Shown here: positions 2,195-38,100 of the stretch, piece after piece
Numbering within the stretch: the stretch's first letter is position 1
How the letters are laid out: each line of letters starts with the position of its first letter
Source of the DNA: Laetmonice hystrix
Lineage: Eukaryota
NCBI GenBank assembly: GCA_965235115.1
Contig: OZ249441.1
Span: 13,454,001-13,518,000, forward strand
Reading direction: 5' to 3'
DNA length: 64,000 nt
Position numbers and translations under genes: made by a program
The notes under the pieces: generated by a model
Databases searched by the model: none
What the model was told of the DNA's origin: nothing
The model's input: only the letters and a program-made list of their open reading frames with translations

Positions 2195-5100
2195 CTGGTA
2201 AACAGTTCAAACAGGGAAACATTATTGAACCTGACAACGAGTTCACACAATCAACTAAACATCTTCGAATATGGATATTATAATTTGCTTTTCCGTAACA
2301 TTATTCTGTTGTACATTAAGTCCTTGGATGCTAAGCCGACTGTCCTACACGTGGCATCCAAGGCAAATTCTTAAAAATCAGACCCCGATGTAAATCACAG
2401 CGTGGGAAAGTGAGATAGCTTCACTAAGATATGAGCATAAAGTAGGACTTACTTGGTTGTGCTAACTGGAATATACTGTTACTCGTGCTGTGTTGGTAGT
2501 CCATATTGCTACCTTGAAATGGTAAGAAAGATCAGTCAATACATACTCAAGAAATACGTAATGGGACAAGATACTTTTGTAAAGAGGGAAAGCGTCCATG
2601 TCCAACAAGGTATAGCGGGTAATATAATCGACGACTATGGAGGAGAGGTCCCGGGTTGGTGCGAGTGTCATCCAGTAATAGTTATTACTCCCGTGAAATG
2701 ATTACAAACGTCTGTTTGTGTAACTATTCGGTAGGTGTCCCCATGGGGGTCGGGTGAGTGGGAGAAACAGTTGTGCTGGCCAGATCTGCGTCCTGAGGTT
2801 ATAATCTCGAGTTCCGTACAGAATGGAGAAACTGCACAGTAACCAACTCCACACCAAGCTGACCACCTTGTGGGTTGCAGCCATGCGCATGCAGTTAACA
2901 GGACCCCGAGCTGCTACAGTGGTTTACTCCTGTACCATCTACATGTATATGTATGTATAAGCGCACACATATATATAAATGGATCAGTTATAATACAGAC
3001 CCACAAAGACAGGACAATAAGGCTAACTATCAAACATTGCTAGATGGACAACATTTACTTCAGAAACAGACTCACAGCCCAAATCATGTACCATGAGAAC
3101 ACGGACATTTCCTAGCATTTCTTTCTTTCCTTATGTCACACTTCAGATTGAGGAAGGTTGAAGAAGTTGATTTGACTGTTGTAGTTTCAATGACAGTGTG
3201 TGTGTGTGCGTATTATCAGATTTCTGCCCGCCATGTCCACTGTTAAACACTGAACACTACGACACTGAAAGTGGGGCGTTATGTTCCACTGATGGTAAAA
3301 CATGCCCGAGCGCCCCCTGGTGGTGCGTTCAACGCCTAGCTGAGCCAAATACTGGTGAACCAAAGACACTGCACTGTACAGTAGCATGCTCTCACCTAGT
3401 CCTAGTTGTCCTGTCTTTCCTAATAAAGCAGCTTCAAAAAGAGAAAACACACGTCAGTGTCTCACTTAACATGTGTCCAAACTCAATCTAAGACATGCTT
3501 GTCAAATTGGAAAAAAAGTATGGAAACCCAAGTCAAAAACCAATACATCAATTCAAAAATAATGATATTGGAAATAAATGTGTAAAAAATCAAAGTGGTA
3601 AAATAAATAGGCTGTACTAAACATTCTACAACCAGAAACCTAGGAAAGCTTAGCCGTAAGGACCTGTCTGATTAGAATTGGATGGGCACCGAGGTGACGT
3701 AGTTCTTACTGTTTACGGTCAGTATCGAGAATCAAATAACACGTACGTCTCTCTTATCTATACAGCAATCATTCCCTAACTCAGGACTGGTTCTCCCTTG
3801 TAACTTTGGGATCTTAATCTTAGATAAACTTCTCCCCTTGCAGTGTACCAACCATGCGACTTATACAAAATATTATCTAAACAGATCCAGTTGGAAGTCA
3901 GGATGTAAGAAGAAATCTGAAGGACGGATAGAACACGCTAAACTTGTCCCACCTATTAGGGAGGTGGATATAAATTGTGAAAACTGTTGGAATGTCTTGA
4001 AATTTAAGCGAGCCTCACGCGGGGATGATTTGCGTAACCAAGGAAGCGGAAGGATTCAGGGCACTACTATAGACAGAGCTGTGACCTGACATATGGAGAA
4101 GTCACCTCGAGTCAGAGTCAAGGTGGACAATCCCAAACACTGTGGACAGACTGGGCGCATGAAAGCGATGGAGAGGGAGGGTGGGAGGGAGGCAAAAGAT
4201 TGAGATTGAGGTGGGAGGGGAAGGGCAGCAGGATTAAGTAAAAACAAAAGGGTTGCCCGCGAATGGAGGGGTGTGTGGGTAAGCTGCTCAAAAAGCCAAC
4301 CAGATGTATTTTTGCGGCTATGAGGCCAAATAAAGGCAGAAGGGCCAACCTGAGTTGGAAGTTCCACTGCCACCTGAAACAAGGACGAGGAGGTCATGAG
4401 ACCAAGGTCACTGACTCAGTGACGTCACTATCCGTAACGTCACCATGATGAAAGGAAACCTAGACCTCCGAACATCACCGGGATGACGTGTGCGCATCAT
4501 CTGGTGACGTGTCACTGTTAGAATGTGACGTTTTACGTCAGGCTACCATAACGGTGACAGGTGACGTCACGCAGTGACGAGTGACAGTCACTGGTTGACG
4601 ATTCACATGTCCCATAACAACCCTTACCCATCTCAATTCATACAATATAAACTATACAACAAAATTGAATAAAACACAAAGTTTTGGAAAGTGATAAGAG
4701 CTGCAAAGAGAGACAAATGAAAACGGCAGATTTACAAATCAAGAGACACAATAAGTGTGGAGTCGGTGGGGGGGGGGGGGGGTTAGACATGAAGGGAGAC
4801 ATGATCTGAGTGCTTACAATGGGACGGGAAGACAGCACTATGAGGACAGGTCGGCGACATACTCAGTATTCATTTGGTATACCTCACACCAACCGTTTCA
4901 TATCGGAGCCTGCACAACCTCATTTACCGTCACCTATTACTTCTGCTTCCAGAACCTACATCAGAATCTATAACCCATTTGGTTAAAAAATCACATATAA
5001 AATTATTTTCTGGACAACCTGGGGTGTTCTTGTTCAATATGGCACTATCCTTTGAGTAATACTCCCTTAAACTGACTTTCGTTTGGACATCAAACCACAC

Positions 5101-14100: not shown

Positions 14101-17100
14101 GGCCATGGTGAAGATAGTTCCCCGGTCTCCACCAGGGGTCGGGCCACATCCACTCTCCATTCAAACGTGACAACTTTCACGCTACGAGTGGCGGGATGTT
14201 TACTGTCTGACACTTTCTAAACACAACAATGACATCAAAATTAAGGAATGCGAGGTACCCATCTAAATCCTACCTGGTTGACTCCATCAGTAATGATATG
14301 ACCGAGTAGGAGACGTCCTACCCATCCAGAGAGCACACTCAGGGAGGTGATGATGTAGGAGATACACTTACCTTTACTTTGTCCATTCTGTTCACGGAGT
14401 ACCGTACACTCCTCAATCGTTCCGAACGGTGCAAACATCATCCTCACATCGTTCTCCGAACATTTCTTAGACAACATGCCTACAAACAGTTTCCGCTCTT
14501 CAACTGAAAGAAAACACGGCCCGGCTTGAGTAACTCTCGACAAACTTGAAATTCTAATAACTTAAACTGAACAAGGAATCAGAAGGGAGACCTCCATTAA
14601 CGTATGGTCCCATAATTATCTCAGCCATACACAATCCAATATACCGGGAAGACAACGGGTAACATCTCATTCCCTACTGTGACAGGTCAGGTTCGCCTAT
14701 TTTAGACCCCCTCCCGGACACTTCCTGTAGACTTCAGCACTGATTTGTAACCCTTTTATACCTCGTTCATTTCTCTGTCTCTACCCTCGTACCATGATTA
14801 GCATACCCAGGTTTACACACCCTGGCGCTGATTTCATGTGATGGCCTAACGTCCCTCTCTGATCACCCCCCACCCCACCTCTCACCGAGAACCCCTGCCT
14901 CCATAGCTACCCCTCATCACTATCCCCTGTACCACCCTCCACCGCTCCCACCAAACGTTTACACCCTTCCTCCCAGCACACCCATCCCTAGGAAAACCTC
15001 ACCCCGGCTCCAGCTGAGAATACACCCCGCCAGATGGCACCACCTACAGTCTCATTGGAAAAGAAACCTTTTTTCGGTGTCTCTGTATTGGCATCAACAA
15101 AGGCAGCTGCGCCGCAGGCGTTGAGAGGGTTTATCTTATCCGTAACACTGGTCTGGTGGACGTTTACTGTTTGAGGTAGTCTTTTACATCATTTAGCTTT
15201 TTCAGTGGTCTGATAATACCCCCACAGGCCCGGGGAGCCTTACTTTGAGTAAACCCTGAGAACGCCACAGTACTTGGATGATCGGGTTAAAGGCAAACAT
15301 TAAATGAGCTCCTTAGTGGATGGCCCTCGTCTGGAGGCCGCGCGTGTCTGGGACGGACAGCCAGTCATGTTTATTATTGCTGCAGTACCTGCAGACTACC
15401 ACTGCGGTACCTGGTCCGTCTTACCGCCATGGCTGTGGTAAGGGCCTCCTGTTACTGGAAGCTCCGACCAGCCGCCCTGCCAAACGACACCAGACATCCC
15501 AGTCCCAATACCTACTTTCTGCACTCCATTTACATCTCCAAACAAAGTCAGATATCTGCTGGCTGTGAAATGATAGCTAACATAACACACCTAGCCTGGC
15601 AATGGACAGGATCCACGATTTCTAAAGGATAGACCTAAACATCAGGGTACTGACTCTCTGCCATCAATATCCTCACCGGAACAGTCAGCTACAGCTGATT
15701 CCATGGTGTCACACACGTGTCACAGAATGTGGAGAATAGATTTGGCTTTGAAGCTTTGCAAACACTACAATCTGTTGCTATGAATAACGCATTCATGACT
15801 CCGCGATAACGCCACAGATACCGGCCCGGTGAATCCATGCTGCAGCAGCTAAATTAACTCTGGTAGACAGTACTAATAACAACGGTGAAAACACTTCTCC
15901 ATGTCATAATAACATAGCAGATTAAAACTTAATACTCAAACCAACTAATTAACTTCACTGTCGTACCTTTAAGAACCTTTTTTTTTAAACGCATTGCTCA
16001 TACTTTTATTATTTTCTTTGTGTCTCGTTTTCTGCCGGTACTTCAGATTTCGTTCCTTGTGTGTAAAAACTGCAACTCACCATTTCTCTTTTCGCTGTCG
16101 GCCGGCTTCATCTGTATGGGATGTTGCATCTGCGGATGACAAATTTAGCTCAACATAAATACAAAGGTCTCAGTAAGTGCCACTCTCAATGTTGCTAACA
16201 ACATTCAAAACATGTTAGACTTTTACCGCTATTTAACCAAGGCAATCTGGGAACAGGAAACGGATTCTATTACCTTGCTATGATAGGAGGACAGTACTCA
16301 AGGTCAAACTCTATATATCACAGTGCATAAAACCTTCAGCAGACATAGAATATACTGAGCTCTTCATGTATTTAGTGGATCCCTCTGAAACTGTTTATTT
16401 CCCACATTGTTTCCCTGGAGGCCTCGTGATTCTAACCATAACACAATCAAGCTTCCTTACTCTATTGTCAGACCCTTCCATTCCGCCTCGTCAGACCCTT
16501 CCATTCCGCCTCGTCAGACCCCTCCAGCCTCACCAGACCCTTCCTTCCCGCCTCGTCAGACCCCTAGCCTCGCCAGACCTTTCCCTCACCCTCGTCAGAC
16601 CCTTCCTTCCCGCCTCGTCAGACCCTTCCCTCTCCCTCGTCAGACCCCTAGCCTCACCAGACCTTTCCCTCTCCCTCGTCAGACCTTTACCTCCCGTCTC
16701 GTCAGACCCTTACCTCCCACCTCGTGAAACCCTTACCTCCCGTCTCGTCAGACCCCTAGCCTTACCAGACCTTTCCCTCTCCCTCGTCAGACCTTTACCT
16801 CCCGTCTCGTCAGACCTTTACCTCCCACCTCGTGAAACCCTTACCTCCCGTCTCGTCAGACCCTTACCTCCCGTCTCGTCAGACCCTTACCTCCCGCCTC
16901 GTCAGACCTTTACCTCCCGCCTCGTCAGACCTTTACCTCCCACCTCGTCAGACCTTTACCTCCCACCTCGTCAGACCTTTACCTCCCACCTCGTCAGACC
17001 TTTACCTCCCGCCTCGTCAGACCTTTACCTCCCACCTCGTCAGACCTTTACCTCCCACCTCGTCGGACCCATCCCTCTCCCTCGTCAGACCCTCACCTCC

Positions 17101-20100
17101 TCTTGTCATACCTTTTAGACCACTGCGATATTAAAGTTGTGTGTGTGTGTGGGGGGGGGGTGTAGGTGTGCGTAGGTTTGGGTGCGCTTGCGTTGTTGGT
17201 ACGTTTTTAAACCTCACAACAATGTCTTCCTGCGTCATCCTCTGCTTCCATTAATCGATCTACTATCTGATCACATATATGCCTATACCCTAGACACTAA
17301 TCAAACCATGATCCCATTTCACTAATTACATCATCCTCTCCTGGGAAATCTTATCAATACCGCCTCCAAGCCCGGAAACGCTTAGCACAGCACGAGAATA
17401 ATGGCCGACATGGGACACAGGCACCAGTAAAAAAAAACATGGCTAGCCCTGGTAGCATTTCAAACAAGGAGCGCTGACCGGTAGAGGCGGTACCAACTAG
17501 CCAGTGACAACGTGCTGTCCTGGCCATAGAAAGACCGCTCAGACCTGGCATCTTTGCTGTCGTGATGTCAGGCTGGGGGGGGGGGGCTCTGTGGTAGGGG
17601 ACACAGTAACTGAAGGCGGGGGGGCTCCCTGGTATGGGGCACAGTAACTGAAGGCGGGGGGGGGGGGGCTCGGTGGTAGGGGGCACAGTAACTGGAGGCG
17701 GGGGGGGGGGGCTCCGTGGTAGGGGGCACAGTAACTGGAGGCGGGGGGGGGGGCTCCGTGGTAGGGGGCACAGTAACTGGAGGCGGGGAGGGGGTCCGTG
17801 GTAGGGGGCACCGTAACTGAAGGCGGGGGGGCTCTGTGGTAGGGGACACAGTAACTGAAGGCTGGGGGGGGGCTCTGTGGTAGGGGACACAGTAACTGAA
17901 GGCGGGGGGACTCCCTGGTAGGGGGCACAGTAACTGGAGGCGGGGGGCTCCCTGGTAGGGGGCACAGTAACTGAAGGCGGGGGGCTCCCTGGTAGGGGGC
18001 GCAGTAACTGGAGGCGGGGGGACTCCCTGGTAGGGGGCACAGTAACTGAAGGCGGGGGGACTCCCTGGTAGGGGGCACAGTAACTGGAGGCGGGGAGGGG
18101 GTCCGTGGTAGGGGGCACAGTAACTGAAGGCGTGGGGACTTCCTGGTAGGGGGCACCGTAACTGGAGGCGGGGAGACTCCGTGGTAGGGGGCACAGTAAG
18201 TGGAGGCGGGGAGACTCCATGGTAGGGGGCACAGTAACTGAAGGCGGGGGGATTCCCTGGTAGGGGGCACAGTAACTGAAGGCGGGGGGACTTCCTGGTA
18301 GGGGGCACAGTAACTGAAGGCGGGGAGGGGGTCCGTGGTAGGGGGCACAGTAACTGAAGGCGTGGGGACTTCCTGGTAGGGGCACCGTAACTGGAGGCGG
18401 GGGGATTCCCTGGTAGGGGGCACAGCAACTGAAGGCGGGGGGACTTCCTGGTAGGGGGCACAGTAACTGAAGGCGGGGGGACTTCCTGGTAGGGGGCACA
18501 GTAACTGAAGGCGGGGGGACTCCCTGGTAGGGGGCACAGTAACTGGAGGCGGACGTAGAAAGCGTTCTCATGTAACACCCGAGAACAGCTCCGGAAGCTC
18601 ACCTGTCAGGTGGGAGAGGACTATTTCCACACGGTCACATAATCTAGAGGTGGACACAAGACAATAGGCATACTAATCTCTTTAGTGTCTATAACTGTCA
18701 TTACGGCCTCATGCAACAAGGCGTTATTTGCTTTCCAGTCCATGTACTGCCTATTTATGTCTCCTTGTCTGGGGAGTCGCTATTACATTATGAAATATGC
18801 ACTGGGGAGGCTCCTTTTGACAGAACACATATCTTATATTGACACCAGCCGTTCGTGTTACTATTCAGTGCACCAGAGTGAAAACTGGAACCCAACAGTG
18901 GGGAAACCTATACGTTGACGGTTGACGGGAACAGTTTCAACAGGTTTCAAGGTGCTCAGACTGTGTACAGATGGCTAGAATCGAGTCGGGTTGGTGGGGA
19001 CTACAAGCAGCAGAACTAGGTACTGACAACAGGAGACTGTCGTGACACTAATGAGACAATAAAAGATCCTATTATCATTATCATCCTGGTTGGCATCCTC
19101 ATTGCTAGAAACCCAATCATAGATTTCTCGCTTTGGTCAGAAGTCCGTCGGTGCATTGGACACTCCCATTGTCTAATTTTTAATTAGGGGATGTTCCCAT
19201 CCTCGACATGAAAATCTAGAGGGGTTTTATAATATTTTACAACGGTACCATCAGAAAAGTAGGCCAGCTTCAAAATGAGTAGGTCAAATTCACTGTGGCC
19301 CATCGAGCGCCTACTACCTGTCATACTAATAATCCCATTCCGCCAAGCTCAGACCCCTTCCTCATACCAATCAACACCTTATGCCACTCTGGGGGTCAAA
19401 GATCAAGTCTGACATTCCCCTGTCCCGGCACACATCGATCACCCTACTGTTGCCATAGCAACAGATCAACTCCACTTAGATTTGCATTTTCCCAGTTATC
19501 CTTGAGAGCAGGGAAGGCATGCCGAGTGTATGGAGCAATGCCAGTGGGGTATTTATTACATGGAGTCGCGCGGTCATTGGGACAGGGGCCGGTTTTACTA
19601 AAGAGTCGAAAATAACGACGTCGAAAATTTAACATAGAAGTGAATGGGTTGCTAGGTCGAAAATAACGACCTAGCAACCATTCACTTCTATGTTAAATTT
19701 TCGACGTCGTTATTTTCGACCTTTAGTAAAACCGGCCCAGGACTGTTAAGGTGTTAATAACCTATGCCTGGGTGAGAACGATGCGGGGGTGGCCTACCAT
19801 AACAAAGCATTATCCTCACACCCACTTTACAATACACGTATATGTCAGGTAATACATCCGATATCGTACTGATATTGTCGGTTTGCCAGACAGACGCCCA
19901 CTGCTAACTCGTATCAGTCAGTCCGACTTTCGATCCAACAATATGTAACGTCCGTATGTACTCCGATAACGTGCGCAATACGTCACACATGTCAGACTGT
20001 CAGTTATACCATATGGATTGTATACCACATCAATATAGACAAGTCATATCACCCAGTCACATCGCATAAACATAGCCAGTCATATATTGGATACAATCTC

Positions 20101-23100
20101 AATGAAATCAAACAGAGATGTTGTCAATGTGAGACAGATAGGTCAGTCTGACGTCACTGCTAACAGTCGCACACTGTCCGCTAAATATGCAGGGAGCGTA
20201 GGAAACCATCTTTTACGTGTTTGAAATATGAATAGATGTGAGGAGGGGGCTGGCGAAATAAAAACAGCTAAAATTATCGATCAACTTGGGGTCCACTTAA
20301 TTCAGTATCGCAGGTACCAAATCATGTTGTCTACCCCATACTGTATGAAGAAAGATGATCGTCTATATATATATCTGGGGGAAACCCCCGCTACTTGCGT
20401 CTTGAGTGTATTATTTGTTGTCTTCACTTCATCTACAGCCGGTTTTTCTTGTCTGCGCCACTCTATTTCCTTCACTATCTTTTGAAATATTTCTATCTCC
20501 GTAACATGAGCTCATGAAGACAGCTGTACACGCAGTATTTCTAGACCCTTTATTATTTTTAACATTAAATATAGCACGTACGCAATACAGTGTTCAACTA
20601 AAAACCGTCGATATCCTCAACAATCTGAATCCTCTTCAAAGAACAGTCTCCGGAAATCAATACACTATGGCCTTTTAGACTTTTCTCCCGTTTCTTTCAT
20701 TTAATAAACATTTCGAGAGCCGCACAATCTGAAGAGCGCCACTTTCAGAAATCAAAAGATTAACCCCTTCCTCAAGGATCATCCCTTCGAGTATTAATTG
20801 ATCTCGTAGCAGATTAATCCTCTTGAGATAGCTGGCTATGCCCTGGGAGGGCCGTATAGACATAGCGACCCCCCGCGGCACTGATCCTAGCCCCCAGCCC
20901 CTCACTCCATGTACAAACGGTCGAGTATCTCTTTCACACACCCACACACACACAAAGTGATTACTGCCAGCTATGGCGACCGGATCTGTTCACACAGACA
21001 CAGCGCCCATCGCTCGGCGACAGCTCTGTCAAACACAACTCGGTGACACTGCAGGTCTATCTGTCAAACACAACTCGGTGACACTGCAGGTCTATCTGTC
21101 AAACACAACTCGGTGACACTGCAGGTCTATCTGTCAAACACAACTCGGTAACACTGCAGGTCTATCTGTCAAACACAACTCGGTGACACTGCAGGTCTAT
21201 CTGTCAAACACAACTCGGTGACACTGCAGGTCTATCTGTCAAACACAACTCGGTGACACTGCAGGTCTATCTGTCAAACACAACTCGGTGACACTGCAGG
21301 TCTATCTGTCAAACACAACTCGGTGACACTGCAGGTCTATCTGTCAAACACAACTCGGTGACACTGCAGGTCTATCTGTCAAACACAACTCGGTGACACT
21401 GCAGGTCTATCTGTCAAACACAACTCGGTGACACTATAGGTCTATCCGAGTCCATGTCACAATGTGAGTGGTACAAATAGGCTTTACTCAGATAAACTAC
21501 ATGCTAGCGTATTATACATGTACGTGTTGGTGTAAGAAAAGGCAGTGGAAGGACAACTCTATGCAGGTTCTGCTCCTTTGTTCTGGCTGACTCGCCTTTC
21601 CATAGTAGTAAGTTTATACCATACGTTGAATACGGTATATGTAACAGAAACATACATACATGCACGATTAGGTAGACTCATCAGGAATTAAGTGTCATTT
21701 ACTGTGTTATTGTCGAATTTTGCTTTATCTCATCAGTCCTAGACTGCTTGGCTAAATAGACAGGTGCACTACTTACGGCCAGACTGCAATGCGAGCTTCC
21801 AATCACGTCCAATAAATTCACTGGCTTGTTCAACTTTTGTCTATTCCTAAACCAGCATTGACGAATTTCGCGATGCATTCATTAATTACTTGTCTCATCC
21901 GGCAGGTGCGGCATTAACACTTCTGACAAAGAACGAACAAATTACATCGAACACTGATGTAAAATATTTCTTGCCAATTCAGCTCGTAGCTTTGGAAGTT
22001 GCTGATGAACATTATACCTACCGAACTAACCCAATAATGGAGCGACATCAAGTCTGCCACAGTCCATTAGGGAGCGGCGTGCTCCCACACACTCAGCCAT
22101 CCATTTACATAGCGTCTAATTGCGGGTTTTATGTGTGGTAGGCGGACGAGTCGGTCGCCTGTGTTTCGGGGTGGGTCTGTTATAGGCGGGAACCTCAGTA
22201 AGCAGTAAGTGCTCGTGACAATAGGATTACCTGCTCGTCCTGTCTGACGGCGGCCTGTCACGACAGACCAAATGACATCTCTCTCTCGCCTCCACAGAGT
22301 GGCGAGCGGAAAAACTCGGCCGCTAACAAACCTGCACATTCTCGTTAGATCAGTGAACGACTTGTATGACTGTGGAGGGACACTGGAAGACAATAACTGT
22401 CCACCACCGTCACTTTATCACAGTCATCGATACAAATCAGTCACAACAAATCGGGTATTTTCAGACAAACGCACTTTTTCACTTGTTTTCCAGGCCAATT
22501 GGAAGTCGTACGGTTTATTATGGCCGAGCGCATCCATGTGAAAACGTTCAACCATGGCTGTCCATGGACATTTTACAAATCATGACAGTTTATGTCATTC
22601 CAAGGGACATCGGAACCGTTTCCGTGACAACCACTGAATCTAAACAGGCAGACAAATATCGTATTATATGAGCTTTGTCATCTATGTCATAACGACATCC
22701 ATACCTGACGGTCTGACTAATAACACACATCGCGACATCGGGAATAGGTCAGCCGACTGGTGTCTCAATATGACTAATAAAATCAAGCACATTTCTCTTA
22801 TATCTAAAGTCAATTAGTGGGTGGAAACAAGAGTACTCCATTACCTCTCGTGGCGGTCAATGGTCACTTAACACGGGCAATCTGAGCGCCTGTACGGACA
22901 CTAGGACAACGCTGCCGTACTCATCACCAATCTAACACGGGCAATCTCACTGCCTGCGTACGGACACTAGGACAACGCTGCCCTGCTCATCACCAATCTA
23001 ACATAGGACAACGCTGCCGTACTCATCACCAATCTAACACGGGGAATCTCACTGCCTGTACGGACACTCGGACAACGCTGCCGTACTCATCACCAATCTA

Positions 23101-26100
23101 ACACGGGCGATCTCACGGCCTGTACGGACACTAGGACAACGCTGCCGTACTCATCACCAATCTAACACGGGCAATCTCACTGCCTGTACGGACACTAGGA
23201 CAACGCTGCCGTACTCATCACCAATCTAACACGGGGAATCTCACTGCATGTACGGAGATTTCTCTCTTCTTGAATAAGAAGAGAGAAATCTCTTGGTCTC
23301 CCCTTCTTCAAGAAGCGAGTTTTCACCCAGTGGTGGGTGCAATGGGTGAATGAATTCCTTCTTCAATTGAGACCACTAGTTATATGACTGCAATACTGGA
23401 TTCCTACTGGATGGTGGCTTCCAGAAAAATAGCGGGTCAACGTATTATCTTTTTAACAACCAATTTGAGACTAGCACTTAGATTTAACAAATAATTTCAA
23501 GTACTTTAAGCAACTGCATGGCATACCATGTTACGCGACTTTTTCTTATGTTTCTTCTGATATATTGTAGTCTATTTATTCCTGTCCTCCAAGGTGAAAA
23601 AGGTGGTAGTCTGGTTGGAGTCGCTCTTTCTCCCTATGGTCTTGGGAAGACCATATCTTAATCTTACCGATCAAGAATGTAAAACCTCTCTTCCGAAAAA
23701 CCCCATCAGTCTTAAGTTACGGACAAGCGGTATCTGATACGATCGCTTCTAACATGTCCAACATTAGACAGCTTTTCAAAACATTTTTGAGAGGTCTTTC
23801 CGGCAAGGAGAACATTCCAACCAAGTCGGCCGTTTCTTACATTCATCCCGTTTCCAATTTCTATCAAATATTAACGCCATTCTGAAGCAATATAGGATTA
23901 AGTGAGTGTGTGCAAGCAGTGCCCTGCAGCGTGCCCGTGGGAGCCGTATCGAGTTGTGAGATGACTGTGATCCAGCCCACTAATTACATTCTGTAAGTGG
24001 GTGGGACGCCTGCCCCGTGCCCGGACCGAGACGTTTTCTCCTGACGCCAGTATTGATCTCTCCTCCGGGGGGCCGTACCAAGACCACTGGGAGGGAGGGA
24101 GGAGGGAATCCCGGCTCGGGCTGGGGTCACAACGTCTGTGGTGACTACATCCCCTCCAGTAATGTTCTTGGAAGCGGGTTAGTGGGAAGGAACACCTCGA
24201 CCTTACCATCATGATCTGCCATCAAACCTGATTCAAGTTGGATACATGGGGCAAGTGATATTAACTTCACTGCACCGAATGGGTTCCTGCAACAATCAAT
24301 CCCAGCCCAGTGGCCCCAGACAACACTGCCCTCTGGTGGTCAGGAAATGTAGCGCATAGGTTAGCTTCTCACGAGGAACATGTACAGAGAGCTTGGCCTT
24401 TTCACATTTAAACCAAAATGTACTGTTTATATTTATATTCGCCTTTATACCCCCCTCCCCCCCAAAAAAAAGCTGAATGGAAATTCTCATGAACCCAGAA
24501 CATTAAAGCTGCAGATAAAATTCCTCAAAAACCTTTTATCCTCAGCAGCAACACTATGTTAAATTTCATGTTTGAACGATGAGTGAAAGAATACAGAAAA
24601 TAGAGCTATACTTTCCTTCATTGTTCAAACATGAAGTTTTAACATGGTGTTGCTGAGGGTAAAAGGTAACTATGTGGGGAATAAATGAATTTCCTTTGCA
24701 GTTTAAGAAACCGGTCAGAAATCAACAAATTCTAATACCGTGCATCCAAGGGTGTGTGAAAAAGTTTCATAATTAGTTATGAAGCGATATTATTCACATC
24801 GTTTATTGTAATTACCAAAGAAACGGGGGGGGGGGAAACTTTCTGCAAAATTATGTTATTTTTTTGGTAGGAATTTCAAATTATTTTGATACATAATTTG
24901 TTCCATACAGATTATTAAACTTGATTAAATTGATTTAATATCATTTAATATCAACTCTCCTCGCCATCAATTTCATAGGAAGAAATAATATTACCAGCTA
25001 TAATGACGCTCATCATTGACACAATTCCGACTGTATGAAATGCTCACTGTCAGCAAGATCTGATTAATGAATTTTCTTCATTTTCGGAGCCACAATGACC
25101 GTTTTTCTACGGTTGCATGTTATTTTTATTTAAGAACATTGTATTTATTTTTTCATTTAAGAACACTGAATGGGTGTCGCACAACACAAGTTCAAAAAGG
25201 GTGGGGAAAAACTTTTTATGGAGAGTATATTCGAGGAGCACGACCACAGTTCCATATTCAAGGAGAAGCACCGCGAGCACCCAGTCCGATGTGAGGTAGT
25301 CCTCCTATCCCTGTTCACTCAGTCAGTGGACCTCCCGCCAACTTCAATGCCACATTCGTCCACTCAGTCAGTGACCGCAGGATTAGCCTTCCTAGACAAC
25401 TGCTCCAGTAGCTACCCCCACCCCGGAGTCTGGAGGAGATCTGTGGACCAGTTCTACCGTCCAGTAGCTACCCCCACCCCGGAGTCTGGAGGAGATCTGT
25501 GGACCAGTTCTACCGTCCAGTCCTCCAGGGACACTCCCTGGAGTTCCTCCTGTCACTCGGCCGACACCCAGACACACCAGAGACCTTCTGCTGCCTCCGA
25601 TAACCCACTTTCTATTCTCTTCTCCGTCCTGTTTAGACATTTCCTTGTCGATCACGCCTTCTAAATCAATACGCCTAGTTTTCTATGGGATGGGAAGGGT
25701 ATTAAACATGCATATAAAAAGAAAATGATCAGTATGTTAATTGCAGATTTTATTCAAAGGGCAAGTTAAATCATTCTTTCAATTCCAGCTCTTTCTTTGC
25801 TTCAGCATACAACAGTAAATCACTTTTTTTAAGTTTTGCTCATTGGAAAACTCCCAACTTGTGCTTGTACATGTATCGGGTTTCATTTTCATTATCGAGA
25901 ATTCGAGTTTCAAATTGAGTTGTTGATTCGGCAGTGGGAATACTGCTGGTAGAAGGAGAACACGTCGAGCCTTGCATCCTGAGTTCGTATCGTCGTCTAG
26001 AGTTAACCAATCAGTACCGACAGTCGTCTACAGTTAAAGAGATCACAGTGAAAACCTCTTCTATCACACTGTCTGTTCTCATCAGTCATGTCACCGGTTA

Positions 26101-29100
26101 CCCCCACACCCACACCCACACCCACCCCCACCCCCACCCCCACACCCACACCCCCATACCCACACCCATCCTCCGCCCCCTCTCTCTGTCTCTCTCTCCC
26201 AGCTAAGATTTCATTAACGTTCAAATTCAAACCGGCATGACGAGTACTACAGATATTACAATTATACGAGACTTACCTTGGTAAAGGTTGAAGTAGAATT
26301 AGGATTTTACCGAGGACAACACATAGTGTTGTAGGGAATAGATGAGAAGGTGAGCGCCGGTAGCTCGACACGTCAGACTTTAGCGGGAGCGATAAGGAAG
26401 CCTTATTCCTAACCCTAACAGTTACTCAAGAACTTAATCCTATTGAGACATGTGTATCAATTTACCTTTAAACCTCCGCCAGTGTTTAAATAGGGCGGGA
26501 AGGGTGGGCATCTATTCCCTACAACACTATGTGTTGTCCTCGGTAAAATCCTAATTCTACTTCAACCTTTACCAAGGTAAGTCTCGTATAATTGTAATAT
26601 TTTCCCGAGGACAACACTACGTGTTTCCGGAAATAGATGAGATGTTTAGAGCAGACCGGTAAGGTCAAAGGCTTCCTTCATCGCTCAATAAATAACAAAC
26701 TCCTTCAATTCATTTTATTATTTTATTTAGACCATGCCCAACACTGCTTCCGCTACTGAGCCAGCGTCTTTATCTAAATCCTTATTATAATAAGTTGCGA
26801 AGGATTGTGCATTTTTCCATCCTGCCTGTTTAAGGATCTGGTTAACCGAGACCCCTATCCTATTAGCTGCCGAAGCAGAGGCTCCCCTGGTGGAATGACT
26901 TTTGTATTTAGACGTATCAATCCCAGCCTGGGTCAAAACTTGTAGTGTCCATCTGGCCAACGTATCTCTCGAGATCGGTTTGTGAGGTGGCCGAAAACTT
27001 AACAATAACTGCGTTTCTCCCTTTCTCAGTTTTTTCTGTCCTTTGCACATACTCTTTCAATGTTCTCACGACACATAATCTAAGACATTTGCCATACGGC
27101 CTTAATAATAAGGAATCTAGTGGATCCCCCAGTCTGTTGTGTTTTAGCAAAGTTTTCATTTTAAACACAACCACATCAGCTATATCCATATTTCCCAGAT
27201 CCAAGTTCACTATGGTTTGCCCTCTCTGTGACGTTACCAGTAATAACAACACAGTCAGTTTATGTGTCAACAACTTTAAAGATAATGTCGAACTATGTCC
27301 CCAACTCTTGAAAAGCCTTAAGACTTTACCCACGTCCCAAAAGGCTGAATATTTTGCGGACGGTGGATTCCTCTCATAAACTCCTTTCAATAACCTACAA
27401 ACCAGCGGATGCTTTCCCAGCTGATATCCTTCATACTGTGGTAATATTATAGATAACGCCGATCGTTTCGTATTGATGGCCCCATAGCCGAGGCCCTGCT
27501 CAGACAACAGCACAAAAAACTTACATACCTCCTGTAGTGTTGGTTCTAATAATCTTATTTTTCGTTCTACACAGAACGTCGCCCACTTCTTCAAATAGGT
27601 AGTATACACCTTTTTTGTACTAGGTCTCCAAGAGTCCAAAACTAGTTTAACTGTCTTTAAATCAAACCCTTTCTTCATAAGTTGTTTGGCCAAAAAAGGA
27701 AGGCCACCAACGGGCACTTGCTCATGAAGTCTACTTTGTTTGGGTTTCCTCGAGGTATGAGATTCCCCTTCCGAGTCCTGAAGAGTAGCCTCCTTTTTGC
27801 TACCTTTGACACAGTGGCATACCAGGCCTGTGACGGCCACAACGGGGCCACCAGTATTGCCCTGCTGTTTTCCATCCGGAGTTTGCTGACTACTCTCCCC
27901 ATCAAACTGAAAGGAGGAAAAACATACAAGAAGTTATGACTCCAATCCAGCGAAAAAGCATCAAATTTCCATGCTCCTGGATCTGGTCTTAAAGACACGT
28001 ATTTTGGTATCTTTTTATTTAACCTGGACGCGAAGAGGTCCACGTCAGGCATACCGAAAATCCTACATATCTTTTTGAAAATTGCATCATTCAATTCCCA
28101 TTCAGACTCGTCATTAAACTTCCTTGAATTCAAGTCAGCTCGAACATTACTTACTCCAGGAATGTGTGTGATCGTAATCCAGTTTTCCTGAGCCTCAGCC
28201 CAGTCCCAAATATTCTGAGCTACCTGATTACATTGCTCAGATTTCACTCCTCCCATATTCTTAACATAAGCTAACGCTGTCGTACTGTCAGTCATAACCT
28301 TTATATGTATTCCTGGTTCTCGACATAGACTTTGAAGGCCAAAAAAGATTCCAGTCAATTCCAATACATTGATATGTTTAGTCTGTTCAAATGGAAACCA
28401 TCTGCCTCCAGTTTCTAGGGGGCCTCTGAGAGCCCCCCAGCCAAGCTCAGACGCATCCGTTTCGATCTCTACATGTGGAGCTGGGAATCTTATTTTCCTG
28501 ACTGTCGACAAATGACGCAGCCACCACGTTATATCTTGTTTAGCCATTTCTGACACTACCATAAGTCCATCAAAATCTCCTCTATTCTCTGCCAACGCCT
28601 TATTCTTGTCTATCTCTAACCACTTAATGTGAGCTCCCCCATATTGAACAGCTGGGGCATAAGCTACCATTAAACCAATTAAACCCGAAACCTCTCGGAT
28701 ACTAAGTTTATCTTTGTCCAGAACTTCTGTGGCAGCACGTGCAAATTTTTCTCTTTTTTCTGATGTAAGTGAGACTGTCATATCTACAGAATTCAATTGA
28801 AAACCTAAAAACACTATGTCTTGTCTCGGTTCAAAAACGGACTTCCGAGGGTGAATATGAAACCCTAGATCCTGTAACATCTCACATAATTCCTTAATTG
28901 ATCCACTACATTCATCAAAAGAATCTGCTACAACAAAAGAATCATCTATGTACGGAAAACATTCATGTCCGTTTTCCCGTAAAACCGAGAAAGGTGGCAC
29001 TAACAATTTTGTGAATAGTCTGGGTGCACAAGACAACCCGTTTGGCATACCCACATATTCATACAAGTCCCCTTCAAAACAAAAGCGTAAAAATTTTCTG

Positions 29101-32100
29101 TGCTTTTCTTTTACGAGTACGCTGTAAGCATGAGTCAGATCAACTGACCCCATCCAGACTCCCGGTCTCATTAAGTCCAAAGCAGTCTGAAGCGAAGTCA
29201 TTTTAAAATGTTCGTACTGAACAAACGTATTTAATAAGGTCAAGTCCAGAATTACCCTGTGCCCTACCGGTTTGGGTCTAAGGAACACGTTAGAAATAAA
29301 CTGACCCGGTTCTGGTACTGCTGACTGTCTGACACCCAAGTCTAGTAATGTCTTAAGCTCCTCTCTCATAAAAACCATTTCCTCTGCCCTTAACCTGTAA
29401 GGAGGAGGTACTTTAACTTGCAGAGGTTCTCCATCCTTAAATGGTATAGTCAATCCTTGAACTACATCTATTATCCAGGGATCACTTGTCAAGCGCCCCC
29501 GCAGCTGCTGAAGCCTGTGGTCTTGGCCGAGCTCCATCACTATTCCTGTACCCCTTGAATGGTAGCCCTCTACGTCCGTGCCTATAATTGTCATATGGAG
29601 TGTAACCCAACTGGGGACGATAACCTCCATATCCATACGGATAATGGTATGGCGTCATCCTGTACGGTGGCATTCCTGTTCTGCCTTTCTTCCCTCTCAT
29701 CTGGAATTGCTTGCCAACCTTTTGTCGTTGTCCCTTCATAATCTTTTCTGACAGATTTTGAGTTGTTTCACATTGCTTTGCTGACTCCGACACATTTCCC
29801 CCAAACAGCCAGCTAGGGGAACCACCTTTAATTTTAGGTAGAGACTTTGCATAAATGCTTTGCATCCCTGATTTGATGCTGTCCTTCCTTTTAGCTTTAA
29901 TTCCATTATTCACTAGAGCCATTGCTTTCATTGAATCCAAAGCATTCCCTGCCAGTTTGTCCAGTTCAGAATCGGACTGCCCCCTGGCCAACATCAATGA
30001 CGCTATAGGTGCAAAAGCGGCGATTGACGCCACTACCTCTTTTTGCAGCTGTTTTAAACCTGCATCAACGATCTTTGTCGCCGCATCCATTCCGGCAAAC
30101 ACTTCCTCATCCACCCGTGGCACTACCAAGTGAGGGACATTTCCAGGTGGGGGATATTCCTCCATGATGCGGTCGATTTCCGAGGAAATAGGCGCCGGGT
30201 CTTCGAAAAAACATTCAATCTGTTCCGCCAAACTGGCATGAATATCTTCTCCTTTCCTATCTGCCTCCGTCCATTTATCCTTATTTTGCTTTAAAAGTCT
30301 CACCAACTTCCCCTCCGCCACCGTAACTGGATCATGAGGCTGAACACTAGCAGCCTGAGTTGCCCCCTGAACATCTGTAGACGAATCCTGTCTCACCAAC
30401 ATAGGCGGTTGTCCACCCTCCTCGTCCTCAGATATGTCAGAGTACCCCGTACTCGGGGGTCGGCTACTCGATCTGGAGTCTATTGTACTCCAATCCTCCC
30501 ATTCGGGGAAATACCCCGCCATATGTGGTTGAGGGGCAAATGGATAACCATATGGCATGTATGGCGGAAACATAGGAGGTAACGTGCAGTGTTGTCCCAT
30601 AACGTCGGCGCGTTGGGTAGGTCTAGGTGCCGTCTCAACCTTCCTGGTCATCGGTGCCTGGTCAACACGCTGCACCGAGCACCGTCACGGGTAACTGGTC
30701 ACCCTGCTGTACCGAATGCTCATACCGTTGCGAATCGACACCTTCCATATCCACTGCCTGTGGTGTGGACACGGTCTCTTCCACTGCAGTACACGCAGTC
30801 TTTTTTGTTTTTGGCTTATTTGCGGCTTTTATTTCACTTTTCGATAGGGCTTCTGCAGTTCCCCTCGTTTTTCGTGTCTCTTTATCCGACATAACCAGTC
30901 TGAAAAAGTCAGATAAAATAAATTCAATAATAAGCCTCTGGTAACTACAGCACCAGCGCTCTATATCAGCTCACAGGCTCCCCCGCAGGACCAGCCCGGC
31001 TACTAGTATAACATGGTCTAAATGTAGTACCACTAAAATCTTAGACTGTCCCGCGGTCCAGTCTGGCTGCCCCGTCAATTATGGTGCTCTACATTGGTTG
31101 TCCCGCAGTTCAACCAAAGGCAGCTAAATTATCTTTAATCTACAATAAAAAAAAAGGCTAAACCTCCTACAATGTAGATGGTTTGCCTGTAGAGCACCCG
31201 TTTTTATTTTTTAAAAACCAAAAATGAAGAACTCACCTGTAAAAACACACGTAATCCAAATCACAAACCGCGCGAGCTGGTGTCTAGACGTGTGGTCACT
31301 TCAAGCGCTACACTCAAAACTGACGTGTCGAGCTACCGGCGCTCACCTTCTCATCTATTTCCGGAAACACGTAGTGTTGTCCTCGGGAAAATTAACTAAT
31401 ATAAGCTGACTCCAAAAGGTATCTTCAAACAGACATCTAATCCAATCGCGATATTTGGATTTCTCTCTTGTCCTTCGTATCTGCTAACTAATACAATAGT
31501 TCACTTACTGTCTGCATCTGAATGGACTAGATCTCCGTCGAGCACAAGAATCCATGTGCACTGTTACAATTGTAAGTCCAACCTGACCGGACCGGTGGGC
31601 ACATTCACATTCAAGTATGTGACACTAGGGTCTGGGCTGGAATCCCTGGACGGGATTGGTCACACTGAATGTGTGAAGGAAGACGAGGTCGGCTATTCAG
31701 ACACTTCTTCTTTTTTGCGATCCAATGCAGCAATTATTTTTAATCTAAAGCAATTGCGAGCCCTTCAAATACTTAGGACTTTCTATGGTGTCACATCCAC
31801 CTTGAAGCAAATGGTACATGTGTGTATAACCTTCGCCTTGCCCGACAATCCCTCCCACAAATCACATAGCCATCATGTGGCGCCTCGTTCTGTACGAGGC
31901 CGTTCACGGTATAATACATCATGAACCTGGTGGTTCTCACTAACCAATAATGACTACTTGAGATATTAGTGTGAACTAATGCGCTACTCACCCCAGGCAT
32001 TGTTTTAATGTTGTGCATCATGTTCTGTGCGTCTAAGGCCGCCTTCCTCGTGTAGAACGTCACAAAACAGCACCCTGCAAACAAACAATATTAAAACAAC

Positions 32101-35100: not shown

Positions 35101-38100
35101 TACTTCTATGGATGGCAGAAGGGGAGCCGGACACTGCACTACAGCCTCTGCCGCGCTGGGTGACAATATTTCATGAGCTGTTTTTAGAACACCTCAGTGA
35201 AGGTCTGTCATATATAAGTTCACGAGTTTAGAAGTTGAAAGGTTTTACCAGGGTACAACAGCACAGTTTTCGTCTGGTTCGGAGAGTTACCACTAGGACA
35301 ACCACTGGTTACGGAGTCTGACGCTAGGTGCATAAACCTCACTGTCAGTCATTTATCTTGTCTGATTCATGCGATCATCTTCATTTATTGTATCCACTAC
35401 AAAAAAGGGTCATAAACAAAATGAAATGGTCATCTTTTTTCAACCACGATCACAGTAAATCTCTCGTCGAATTTATTACATGATTAATCACAACCGACCA
35501 GAACACAAGGACAAACCATCTTAAAAAACCGACCTTTACCACATACATGTCGTTCAAATAGCTTTCCAACGGTATTTCTGCTGCAACGTAAATTGCAAAT
35601 TCGGGCCCCCAAAAAATTATAAAAATGCCATTGTAAATCATTTTTTTACGGATATTCGCTGTGAAAGAACAATTATGTATACTCTACATCCTTTTATTCG
35701 ACACAATCACAACAGGATGTGGTTTCAGCTAACATTTACTTATTTCAATATACGACTCTCTGAGTTCAACGGTAACGTTTCAGCTAACATTTACTTATTT
35801 CAATATACGACTCTCTGAGTTCAACGGTAACGTTTCAGCTAACATTTACTTATTTCAATATACGACTCTCTGAGTTCAACGGTAACGTTTCAGATAACAT
35901 TTACTTATTTCAATATACGACTCTCTGAGTTCAACGGTAACGTTTCAGATAACATTTACTTATTTCAATATACGACTCTCTGAGTTCAACGGTAACGTTT
36001 CAGCTAACATTTACTTATTTCAATATAAGACTCTCTGAGTTCAACGGTAACCTTTCAGCTAACATTTACTTATTTCAATATAAGACTCTCTGAGTTCAAC
36101 GGTAACGTTTCAGCTAACATTTACTTATTTCAATATACGACTCTCTGAGTTCAACGGTAACGTTTCAGCTAACATTTACTTATTTCAATATAAGACTCTC
36201 TGAGTTCAACGGTAACGTTTCAGCTAACATTTACTTATTTCAATATACGACTCTCTGAGTTCAACGGTAACGTTTCAGCTAACATTTACTTATTTCAATA
36301 TACGACTCTCTGAGTTCAACGGTAACAGAATACAAGCGGGTGGTGTCCATGCAGCAGATGACGGTACCCCAGTTACTGATGAGGTTCATCAACATTTTGA
36401 CATATCTTATATATAACTTTTACATAAAGTAGGGGATGGGTAGTACGTCCTGGGAGCAAACTTATATTTGGAGAGAACTACTGTAGATTACCCGATATTA
36501 CTACGTATATCTGACATATTTCGTCCTAACATAGGCGTTTCTCTGGAAGTACCGTATCAGTACTGTACCATCTGTAAAATCAGCAGCAATATTCAACGAT
36601 AGAACGATAACAGCTGTTTGATATGGAGGCCCGTCTGTCCACAAACTCTTCTGATTATGGATCCTCAGAAACATTACTGGTTCCCGTTACCTATAAATGA
36701 TAGTGGAGTCGTTGCGCATTCATAATGTCACAGCACAGATTAAAGTCGCTCACTCCCACATAATATCTGGGTCAACAGAATCATTCCACATAGCCAAGGG
36801 CTCTGGCAGCTGAAGCTTACTATCGCAGGACGAATCACTCCAACCAATGTGACCGCGGTATACCACAATGCTGACCATCAGCCATAGGCCCTGGCAGCTG
36901 AAGCTTACTATCGCAGGACGAATCACTCCAACCAATGTGACCGCGGTATACCACAATGCTGACCATCAGCCATAGGCCCTGGCAGCTGAAGCTTACTATC
37001 GCGGGACGAATCAACCAATGTGACCGCGATATACCACAATGTTGACCATCAGCCATAGGCCCTGGCAGCTGAAACTTACTATCGCAGGACGAATCAACCA
37101 ATGTGACCGCGATATACCACAATGTTGACCATCAGCCATAGGCCCTGGCAGCTGAAGCTTACTATCGCGGGACGAATCACTCCAACCAATGTGACCGCGG
37201 TATACCACAATGTTGACCATCAGCCATAGGCCCTGGCAGCTGAAGCTTACTATCGCAGGACGAATCAACCAATGTGACCGCGATATACCACAATGTTGAC
37301 CATCAGCCATAGGCCCTGGCAGCTGAAGCTTACTATCGCGGGACGAATCACTCCAACCAATGTGACCGCGATATACCACAATGTTGACCATCAGCCATAG
37401 GCCCTGGCAGCTGAAGCTTACCATCGCAGGTCGAATCAACCAATGTGACCGAGATATACCACAATGTTGACCATCAGCCATAGGCCCTGGCAGCTGAAGC
37501 TTACTATCGCGGGACGAATCACACCAACCAATGTGACCGCGATATACCACAATGTTGACCATCAGCCATAGGCCCTGGCAGCTGAAGCTTACTATCGCAG
37601 GACGAATCAACCAATGTGACCGCGATATACCACAATGTTGACCATCAGCCATAGGCCCTGGCAGCTGAAGCTTACTATCGCGGGACGAATCACTCCAACC
37701 AATTGCCTACTCATGTGAAAGGTCCACTAAGACCATCTAAAACTGAAGATTGCTTGACTTTAAGGTATCAATTTGGTTCATTGTCCTTGGACCAGTAGAA
37801 GCTGCTCCCCTGGCAGGTCCATCTCAATACCGACTTGATGTAGCCAACCTGCAGACTCTCCCCCACCAGACCTATCCACCTGCCATGGTGTGGTGCTGCA
37901 AGAATTCGCACAAAACATCATTTGGTTTCACAAGAAAACAAACAGCCATCAAATGGAGCGTGCTTGCCCCAAGGTCCTTCCAGCGCCACAAGCAGCCCAC
38001 GCCCTCTCCGCCGCCCCTCACCCGACTCCTGGCCGTAGACCAGTTTTGTACCATCAGTTAGTGTTCTGAAGCCGGACAAGTTACCTATGTCGTGAATGGT

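What the first reader, a model, noticed from the sequence alone, without database searches (positions are those of the whole stretch)
26253..26310. DIRS terminus carries a complete recursive-splice-like site (branch point + pyrimidine tract + AG|GTAAGT), present on both strands via the ICR
Seen: on the host-sense (minus) strand the DIRS right extension reads ...cctaat tctacttcaacctttaccaAG|GTAAGT (junction 26277|26276). That is a YTNAY branch point about 23 nt upstream, 14 of 19 pyrimidines, and a perfect 5' splice site abutting the AG. Because the ICR is its inverted copy, the same motif sits on the plus strand at 26576|26577. Established: a juxtaposed 3'ss/5'ss is the signature of recursive splicing (ratchet points) in long introns, and U1 binding can suppress nearby polyadenylation. 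Inference: the element may supply a ratchet point in either insertion orientation, letting hosts splice past it. Alternatively it may use U1 to read through its own AATAAA signals and reach the right ITR.
Basis: partly seen in the sequence, partly recalled or inferred. Interest (0 to 1): 0.72.

Follow-up and report, generated by a model that had tools for sequence, protein, structure and literature searches.

The report
Conserved palindrome in DIRS transposon end
The splice-site look-alike at the end of this DIRS jumping gene is real and conserved across many DIRS families, but it varies like one half of a small palindromic signal the element needs for its own copying, not like a splice site that helps the host gene.

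Summary
A 5,140-bp DIRS1-like retrotransposon lies on the minus strand (31392..26253), sense-oriented in a 15.9-kb intron of a CELF-like gene. Its 51-nt right extension (rE) carries CTAAT, 14/19 pyrimidines and AG|GTAAGT (26277|26276). The ICR repeats this on the plus strand (26576|26577).

As an 8-mer the motif is not enriched in the window (5 found, 2.3 expected). It is, however, strongly conserved. GTRAGT occupies the same rE position in 24 of 26 DIRS families, with RT identity down to 40%, in this genome and five other assemblies.

The pattern of conservation does not fit a recursive splice site:
- The AG is missing in 5 families.
- The upstream tract is not pyrimidine-rich (median 0.6).
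- Two families changed donor position +5 (GTAATT, GTAAAT) together with compensating changes in an upstream arm.

The heptamer is the 3' arm of an inner palindrome (ACTTAC-AG-GTAAGT) set inside a covarying 8-bp outer stem. In any read-through RNA both copies lie in a perfect 92-bp duplex.

The best reading is a cis-acting replication or recombination signal of the rE/ICR. U1 docking stays a minority option. No RNA data were available.

The parts
26253..31392 (-). Full-length DIRS1-like retrotransposon (5,140 bp), one of about 22 copies that are 98-100% identical
31313..31392 (-). Left ITR; the element starts ATTTTCCCGAGG at 31392
   Evidence: (I2: 80 nt, 86% complementary to 26304-26383)
29482..30675 (-). 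ORF1, gag-like by position, with no Pfam match
27675..29636 (-). ORF2: reverse transcriptase, RNase H-like region and Dam-like methyltransferase
   Evidence: PF00078 E 4.5e-12; PF05869 E 1.5e-5; PF13456 E 5.5e-4
26917..27840 (-). ORF3: tyrosine-recombinase-like, with only sub-threshold Pfam matches
   Evidence: PF13495 E 0.03; PF00589 E 0.055; the homologous ORFs in L043-L045 and L066 carry weak PF00589 hits
26599..26652 (-). Left ICR, the reverse complement of the left ITR start
   Evidence: I3: 54 nt, 93%
26509..26600 (-). Right ICR, the reverse complement of the right terminus; carries AGGTAAGT on the plus strand at 26575-26582
   Evidence: (I1: 92 nt, 100%)
26493..26508 (-). Two C-rich boxes (CCCACC-N4-CCCGCCC) directly after the ICR, present in every family examined
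26304..26383 (-). Right ITR, including the ACAACAC-TAT-GTGTTGT hairpin
   Evidence: (I2)
26253..26303 (-). Right extension (rE), complementary only to the ICR
   Evidence: copy ends
26260..26300 (-). Palindromic rE module. The outer arms are AATTCTAC (26300-26293) and GTATAATT (26267-26260). The inner pairing is around ACCTT/AAGGT or CTTTAC/GTAAG.
26271..26278 (-). AG|GTAAGT, the reported motif; the invariant heptamer GGTAAGT is 26277-26271
31992..32074 (-). Host exon (CELF-like RRM fragment), ending before GTGAGT at 31991

Best explanation
The AG|GTAAGT is the centre and 3' arm of a roughly 41-nt imperfect palindrome that fills the right extension of a large clade of DIRS1-like retrotransposons. 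Because the ICR is the template that regenerates the extension, the palindrome fills the ICR too. The module has three parts. An 8-bp outer stem (AATTAAAC...GTTTAATT type) covaries between families. A short inner stem (ACTTAC...GTAAGT type) encloses a variable 2-12-nt centre. A conserved YTCGTWTAAT block follows. It is most likely a cis-acting signal of the element's own replication cycle. It could be a hairpin formed in the single-stranded cDNA or RNA end, or a palindromic binding site, read by the element's RT or recombinase when the termini are rebuilt on the ICR and joined. Shown here: the conservation, the covariation, and the duplex with the ICR. Inferred: which molecule folds and which protein reads it. 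The resemblance to a juxtaposed 3'ss/5'ss is a by-product of the palindrome's sequence. Host recursive splicing is not what keeps it.
For: Twenty-six DIRS families were compared: this genome's families, with RT 40-60% identical to ours, plus families from five other assemblies. GTRAGT is at the same rE position in 24 of them, while the adjacent ITR sequences are unalignable between the distant families. Outer stem on 23 families: 84.8% of cells paired, 5 of 8 pairs changed on both sides, 0 of 500 shuffles reach the observed values, and slid controls give 23-50% paired. On the gapless 8-family set, the inner helix is 91.7% paired. The pair opposite donor position +5 occurs as C:G (5), A:T (1), T:A (1) and T:G (1). 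The outer helix has 7 of 8 pairs with double changes, and 0 of 500 shuffles reach this. Indels between families fall in the centre between the arms. The two-tier hairpin is the MFE as ssDNA in L055, L059, L060, L068 and L073 (z -2.5 to -4.7). The ICR is required for DIRS-1 retrotransposition, the cDNA intermediate is single-stranded, and a hairpin at DIRS-1 positions 4792-4805 of 4814 was proposed to prime reverse transcription (PMC7192593).
Against: The hairpins are weak: -1.4 to -12.3 kcal/mol as DNA. RNAalifold predicts no consensus structure. In this window's family and in L044 the outer stem is not in the MFE. The heptamer arm is far more invariant than its partner arm. All sampled families of this genome keep GTRAGT, and the only change is A to G at +3, which a 5' splice site also tolerates. 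Pairing alone therefore does not explain the constraint, and a sequence-specific reader is needed. No experiment links the module to any step of the DIRS cycle.
Confidence: 0.68

Rival explanations
1. The heptamer is a U1 snRNP docking site without a partner 3'ss, used by the element itself. It could suppress cleavage at the element's own AATAAA signals upstream of the ICR. It could also act on antisense transcripts that start at the right ITR and meet the plus-strand copy in the ICR.
For: AAG|GTAAGT gives 8 contiguous pairs with the universal U1 5' end (established knowledge). GTRAGT is kept in 24 of 26 families and in every sampled family of this genome, while its palindromic partner arm and the ITRs vary. 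The only in-genome variant is GTGAGT. AATAAA lies on the sense strand at 26727 and 26719, before the essential ICR. Both DIRS-1 ITRs have promoter activity (PMC4482531 abstract).
Against: L068/L069 have GTAATT and L073 has GTAAAT. The +5 G, a key U1 contact, is lost and is compensated in the opposite arm. The conserved block extends at least 10 nt beyond any 5'ss consensus. In DIRS-1 the sense mRNA lacks almost the whole right repeat (PMC7192593), so the rE copy may not be transcribed by the element. Whenever both arms are in one RNA, the site is buried in a 92-bp duplex.
Confidence: 0.14
2. The site is a recursive splice site (ratchet point) that lets host introns be spliced in steps past the element in either orientation.
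For: In this copy all sequence parts are present on the host-sense strand inside an intron: a CTAAT branch-like motif, 14/19 pyrimidines and AG|GTAAGT. The ICR supplies the same on the other strand.
Against: The AG is absent in 5 of 26 families and the upstream tract is not pyrimidine-rich in most. Selection on a retrotransposon terminus across families with 40% RT identity is hard to ascribe to host benefit. The site is in a perfect 92-bp duplex in the pre-mRNA. The intron is 15.9 kb, shorter than introns known to use recursive splicing (established knowledge: tens of kb in Drosophila, over 100 kb in vertebrates).
Confidence: 0.05
3. There is no function of its own. The sequence persists only because the rE must match the ICR, and the families inherited it.
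For: rE and ICR are 100% identical in young copies by the copying mechanism itself.
Against: Complementarity to the ICR constrains only the match, not the sequence. The neighbouring ITR parts diverged beyond alignment between families, while the heptamer, the following block and the stem pairings were kept, with compensatory changes.
Confidence: 0.1

Closest known systems
DIRS1-like retrotransposons with ITR/ICR/right extension, especially the molluscan AcaDIRS1/2 type (Piednoel et al. 2011, PMC3266345, Table 3)
   Same: Size is about 5.1-5.8 kb. Ends are ATT-type. ITRs are short. The rE is about 48-51 nt. The ICR halves are about 45-54 and 88-92 nt and overlap at the circle junction. ORFs are gag, RT-RH-MT and YR without long overlaps.
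   Different: That survey reports lengths and positions of the repeats but no conserved motif, palindrome or hairpin inside the rE. Here the rE holds a covarying two-tier palindrome with an invariant GGTAAGT.
Hairpin at the 3' end of Dictyostelium DIRS-1 (positions 4792-4805 of 4814), noted by Poulter and Goodwin and proposed to prime reverse transcription (cited in PMC7192593)
   Same: It is a small intrastrand pairing inside the right extension, a few bases from the element's end, in an element whose primer is unknown.
   Different: The sequences are unrelated and homology is not shown. The module here is larger (about 41 nt, two stems) and is supported by covariation across families. Priming has not been tested in either case.
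Recursive splice sites (ratchet points) of long introns
   Same: This copy has a juxtaposed AG|GTAAGT with an upstream branch-like motif and pyrimidines on the host-sense strand of an intron.
   Different: The acceptor half is not conserved, the site is base-paired to the ICR, the intron is short, and no RNA evidence exists.
U1-dependent suppression of polyadenylation by an unpaired 5' splice site (HIV-1 major splice donor and 5' LTR poly(A) site; U1 telescripting). From established knowledge.
   Same: A consensus donor without an obvious acceptor lies within a few hundred bases of AATAAA signals in a retroelement.
   Different: Here the donor-like motif lies at the 3' end and in an inverted internal copy. 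It can change at +5 with a compensating change, and it may not be in the element's own mRNA.
Folded single-stranded substrates of tyrosine recombinases (integron attC, CTX phage attP). Functional analogy only, from established knowledge.
   Same: Imperfect palindromes conserved in pairing more than in sequence, in an element that uses a tyrosine recombinase and a single-stranded DNA intermediate.
   Different: No evidence that the DIRS recombinase binds the module. A recombinase core-type palindrome across the circle junction was tested and not found.

Membership tests
DIRS1-like retrotransposon | Inverted terminal repeats | tested here: met
   26304-26383 against 31313-31392: 80 nt, 86% complementary
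DIRS1-like retrotransposon | Internal complementary region matching both termini, with the two halves overlapping at the circle junction | tested here: met
   26599-26652 matches the left end (93%) and 26509-26600 matches the right end (100%). The halves overlap at 26599-26600.
DIRS1-like retrotransposon | Right extension complementary only to the ICR | tested here: met
   26253-26303 lies outside the ITR pair but inside the ICR pair. About 22 copies end at the same base.
DIRS1-like retrotransposon | RT-RNase H-methyltransferase ORF and tyrosine recombinase ORF | tested here: inconclusive
   RT is clear (PF00078, E 4.5e-12). The Dam-like MT (25.2 bits, cut-off 28.1) and the YR (PF00589, E 0.055) are below Pfam cut-offs, though in the expected order.
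Recursive splice site | Juxtaposed 3'ss and 5'ss on the sense strand of a host intron | tested here: met
Recursive splice site | Both halves conserved among homologous sites | tested here: not met
   GTRAGT is present in 24/26 families, but AG in only 21/26, and the upstream pyrimidine fraction has a median of 0.6
Recursive splice site | Site accessible as single strand in the pre-mRNA | tested here: not met
   It lies in a perfect 92-bp stem with the ICR: -201.2 kcal/mol, z -22.9
Recursive splice site | Junction reads, lariats and saw-tooth coverage | not testable with these tools
   No RNA data are available
Functional 5' splice site / U1 site | Match to MAG|GTRAGT | tested here: met
   AAG|GTAAGT
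Functional 5' splice site / U1 site | Substitutions among homologues limited to those that keep U1 pairing | tested here: inconclusive
   Within this genome the only variant is A to G at +3. In other assemblies +5 is T or A, with a compensating change in the opposite arm.
Functional 5' splice site / U1 site | Use in RNA (spliced junctions or U1 binding) | not testable with these tools
   No RNA data are available. Downstream of the rE is host DNA that differs at every copy.
Structured cis-element (terminal hairpin or palindrome) of DIRS | Pairing kept by compensatory changes across families | tested here: met
   0 of 500 shuffles reach the observed values, and slid controls are far lower
Structured cis-element (terminal hairpin or palindrome) of DIRS | Thermodynamically stable fold | tested here: inconclusive
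   -1.4 to -12.3 kcal/mol as ssDNA, z -0.4 to -4.7. RNAalifold predicts nothing.

The most novel reading that the evidence does not exclude
The invariant GGTAAGT of the DIRS right extension and ICR is a dedicated U1 snRNP docking site kept by a whole clade of tyrosine-recombinase retrotransposons. Displayed on a small hairpin, it would control 3'-end formation or the fate of sense read-through and antisense transcripts. The palindrome would serve both replication and U1 recruitment.
Probability: 0.12. Interest if true: 0.75.

Novelty: new member of a known kind. Interest (0 to 1): 0.45.

Why it matters
How DIRS elements prime reverse transcription, rebuild their ends on the ICR and present a site to their recombinase is still largely a paper model. 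The only experimental system is Dictyostelium DIRS-1.

This report defines a roughly 41-nt module in the right extension that is kept across families whose RT is only 40% identical. It has covarying stems and an invariant heptamer. That gives a precise, mutable target for retrotransposition assays and protein-binding tests. I did not find it described in the accessible surveys.

There is also a caution for genome annotation. Each copy of such elements brings a consensus donor-like site on both strands into host introns. Conservation of such a site among transposon copies is not evidence of a splicing role.

Tried and rejected
- **8-mer enrichment in the window.** 5 found against 2.33 expected, not significant.
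- **RNAalifold on the 23-family alignment.** It predicted no pairs. The stems are AT-rich and weak, so I counted pairs on a named structure instead.
- **Recombinase core-type site across the circle junction.** The idea was that the rE 3' block and the left ITR start form two inverted arms around a 4-10-bp spacer. The best palindromes were no better than shuffles in 14 of 15 families, so I rejected it.
- **Rfam on 26150-26750.** Only sub-threshold miRNA-hairpin look-alikes turned up, caused by the inverted repeat.
- **Genome-wide pattern ATTAAAC-N12-32-GTTTAAT.** 208 matches against 225 for the control pattern, so no enrichment. I used it only to see variants.
- **Search for copies lacking the putative leader intron.** All 22 young copies keep it.
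- **Literature.** The 'splice' hits in PMC7192593 refer to the marker intron only. No paper found describes a donor-like or palindromic motif in the rE.
- **Contigs that stop short.** L067, L070, L071 and L072 end before or inside the ICR.
- **Host gene.** The host exons were recognised one by one by motif.

Full report
**What is there**

The window holds a complete DIRS1-like retrotransposon on the minus strand, from 31392 to 26253 (5,140 bp).
- The ITRs are at 31313-31392 and 26304-26383 (80 nt, 86% complementary).
- The ICR has a left half at 26599-26652 that matches the left end (93%). Its right half at 26509-26600 matches the right terminus 26253-26344 perfectly over 92 nt.
- The last 51 nt (26303-26253) have no partner in the left ITR. 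They are the right extension (rE).
- The ORFs run gag-like, RT/RNase H/Dam-like methyltransferase, then recombinase-like.
- The layout and dimensions match the molluscan AcaDIRS type in the survey of Piednoel et al. (PMC3266345, Table 3).
- The genome (627 Mb) has about 22 copies that are 98-100% identical, all ending at the same base.

The host gene is also on the minus strand. A CELF-like RRM exon (assignment from memory of CELF sequences; Pfam RRM_1 only E 0.19) runs from 32074 to 31992 and is followed by GTGAGT. The next exon starts at 16129. The element therefore lies in sense orientation in a 15.9-kb intron. I recognised the exons one at a time and did not build or search a joined model.

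**The observation**

The minus strand reads CCTAAT, then 19 nt with 14 pyrimidines, then AG|GTAAGT with the junction at 26277|26276. The plus strand has the same 8-mer at 26575-26582. As a bare 8-mer this is unremarkable. There are five matches in the window against 2.33 expected, and 6 of 100 shuffles reach five.

**Conservation**

I compared right termini in three groups:
- diverged subfamilies of the same clade (71-88% nucleotide identity);
- many other DIRS families of this genome, with RT 40-60% identical to ours;
- families from five other assemblies (ENA ERZ25767047, ERZ23491340, ERZ17096855/ERZ27290689, ERZ1764477).

GTRAGT sits at the homologous place of the rE in 24 of 26 families. 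One row of that table, L047, was mis-picked by my script; its true site is AAG|GTAAGT. Between the distant families the adjacent ITR sequence cannot be aligned. The heptamer, a following YTCGTWTAAT block and an upstream CTTCA(A)C remain. A family at 37% RT identity (L064) has a different terminus without the motif.

**What the pattern of conservation says**

The acceptor half is not kept. The dinucleotide before GT is TG, CG, TG, AC or AA in five families. The 20 nt upstream have a median pyrimidine fraction of 0.6, ranging from 0.4 to 0.85.

The heptamer is part of a palindrome. In families with a short centre the rE reads ACTTAC-AG-GTAAGT. Around this lies an 8-bp outer stem of the AATTAAAC...GTTTAATT type.
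- On 23 families the outer stem is paired in 84.8% of cells. Five of 8 pairs changed on both sides (for example A:T/G:C, A:T/T:A, C:G/T:A). None of 500 shuffles reach the observed values, and slid partners give 23-50% paired.
- On a gapless set of eight families the inner helix is paired in 91.7% of cells. The pair opposite donor position +5 occurs as C:G in five, A:T in L068 (AATTAC...GTAATT), T:A in L073 (ATTTAC...GTAAAT) and T:G in L060.
- Length differences between families fall in the centre between the arms.

Changing +5 G, a main U1 contact, while repairing the opposite arm is what a pairing constraint predicts. It is not what a splice donor predicts.

**Limits of the structural reading**

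The folds are weak: -1.4 to -12.3 kcal/mol as ssDNA, with z from -0.4 to -4.7. The two-tier hairpin is the MFE in five of eight families tested. RNAalifold predicts nothing.

The heptamer arm is much more invariant than its partner arm. Within this genome the only variant is GTGAGT. Some sequence-specific reader is therefore implied. An element protein that can co-evolve fits the compensated variants better than the invariant U1 snRNA. U1 is not excluded.

**Accessibility and context**

Any RNA that spans both arms, such as the host pre-mRNA, folds them into a perfect duplex. A 376-nt stretch folds at -201.2 kcal/mol, with shuffles averaging -88 and z at -22.9. This buries both AG|GT sites.

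In Dictyostelium DIRS-1 several relevant facts are known (PMC7192593):
- the sense mRNA lacks almost the whole right repeat;
- the ICR is essential at a step after first-strand synthesis;
- the cDNA intermediate is single-stranded and mostly linear;
- a hairpin a few bases from the 3' end was proposed as primer.

The module found here is the closest analogue of that hairpin. AATAAA signals lie on the sense strand at 26727 and 26719, upstream of the ICR.

**Mechanism proposed**

The rE/ICR module is a cis-acting signal of the DIRS cycle. It is either a protein-stabilised hairpin in single-stranded cDNA or RNA, or a palindromic binding site, used when the termini are regenerated on the ICR and joined. 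Conservation, covariation and the ICR duplex are shown. The molecule that folds and the protein that reads it are inferred.

I tested and rejected one specific version. A recombinase core site made of inverted arms across the circle junction is not better than shuffles.

**Ranking of explanations**

| Explanation | Confidence |
|---|---|
| Structural cis-element | about 0.68 |
| U1 docking site | about 0.14 |
| No function beyond ICR matching | about 0.10 |
| Host recursive splicing | about 0.05 |

**Novelty**

The element is an ordinary young DIRS1-like family. I did not find the covarying rE module with an invariant GGTAAGT described in the accessible literature. Older reviews by Poulter and Goodwin are not in the library. 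My comparison confirms that conservation and extends it.

Noticed in passing
window 31237|31236 (CAG|GTGAGT); AG at 31141/31140 and 30901/30900; ATG at 30892; also L043, L045, L048, L053, L071, L072: The 5' leader of the element has a donor-like site about 155 nt from the left end. Strong pyrimidine-AG sites follow before the first ATG. Donor-like sites occur at similar distances in several other families and assemblies. All 22 young copies keep the stretch, so there are no spliced copies. This is a possible leader intron and was not pursued.
   Followed up: partly
window 26493-26508 (minus strand) and the same place in L043-L062, L073: Two C-rich boxes (CCCACC-N4-CCCNCCC, GC/GT-box-like on the other strand) directly follow the ICR in every family examined. 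A palindromic CTTTAAAG-like box lies about 30 nt before the right ITR in most. These may be promoter elements. Function is unknown.
   Followed up: no
window 32074-31992, 16129-about 16072, about 14489, about 11589 (minus strand): Exons of a CELF/Bruno-like RNA-binding protein gene. The DIRS element and several tandem arrays fill its 15.9-kb intron.
   Followed up: partly
L064 (G000:C29:8406460-8414654), right terminus: A DIRS family with RT 37% identical to ours has a different terminus. It lacks the GGTAAGT module and carries a GC-rich hairpin (GGGCTCC-CCC-GGAGCCC) instead.
   Followed up: no
window 18002-18628, 20920-21549, 22838-23320, 35667-36000: Tandem arrays with units of 38, 35, 64 and 55 nt. 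The first three lie in the same host intron.
   Followed up: no
L063 (G000:C11:22402909-22411019) and L032, L033, L035: Single copies carry a point change in the heptamer in only one of the two arms, for example GTTAGT in the rE against GTAAGT in the ICR of L063. This is decay after insertion and is useful for dating copies.
   Followed up: no
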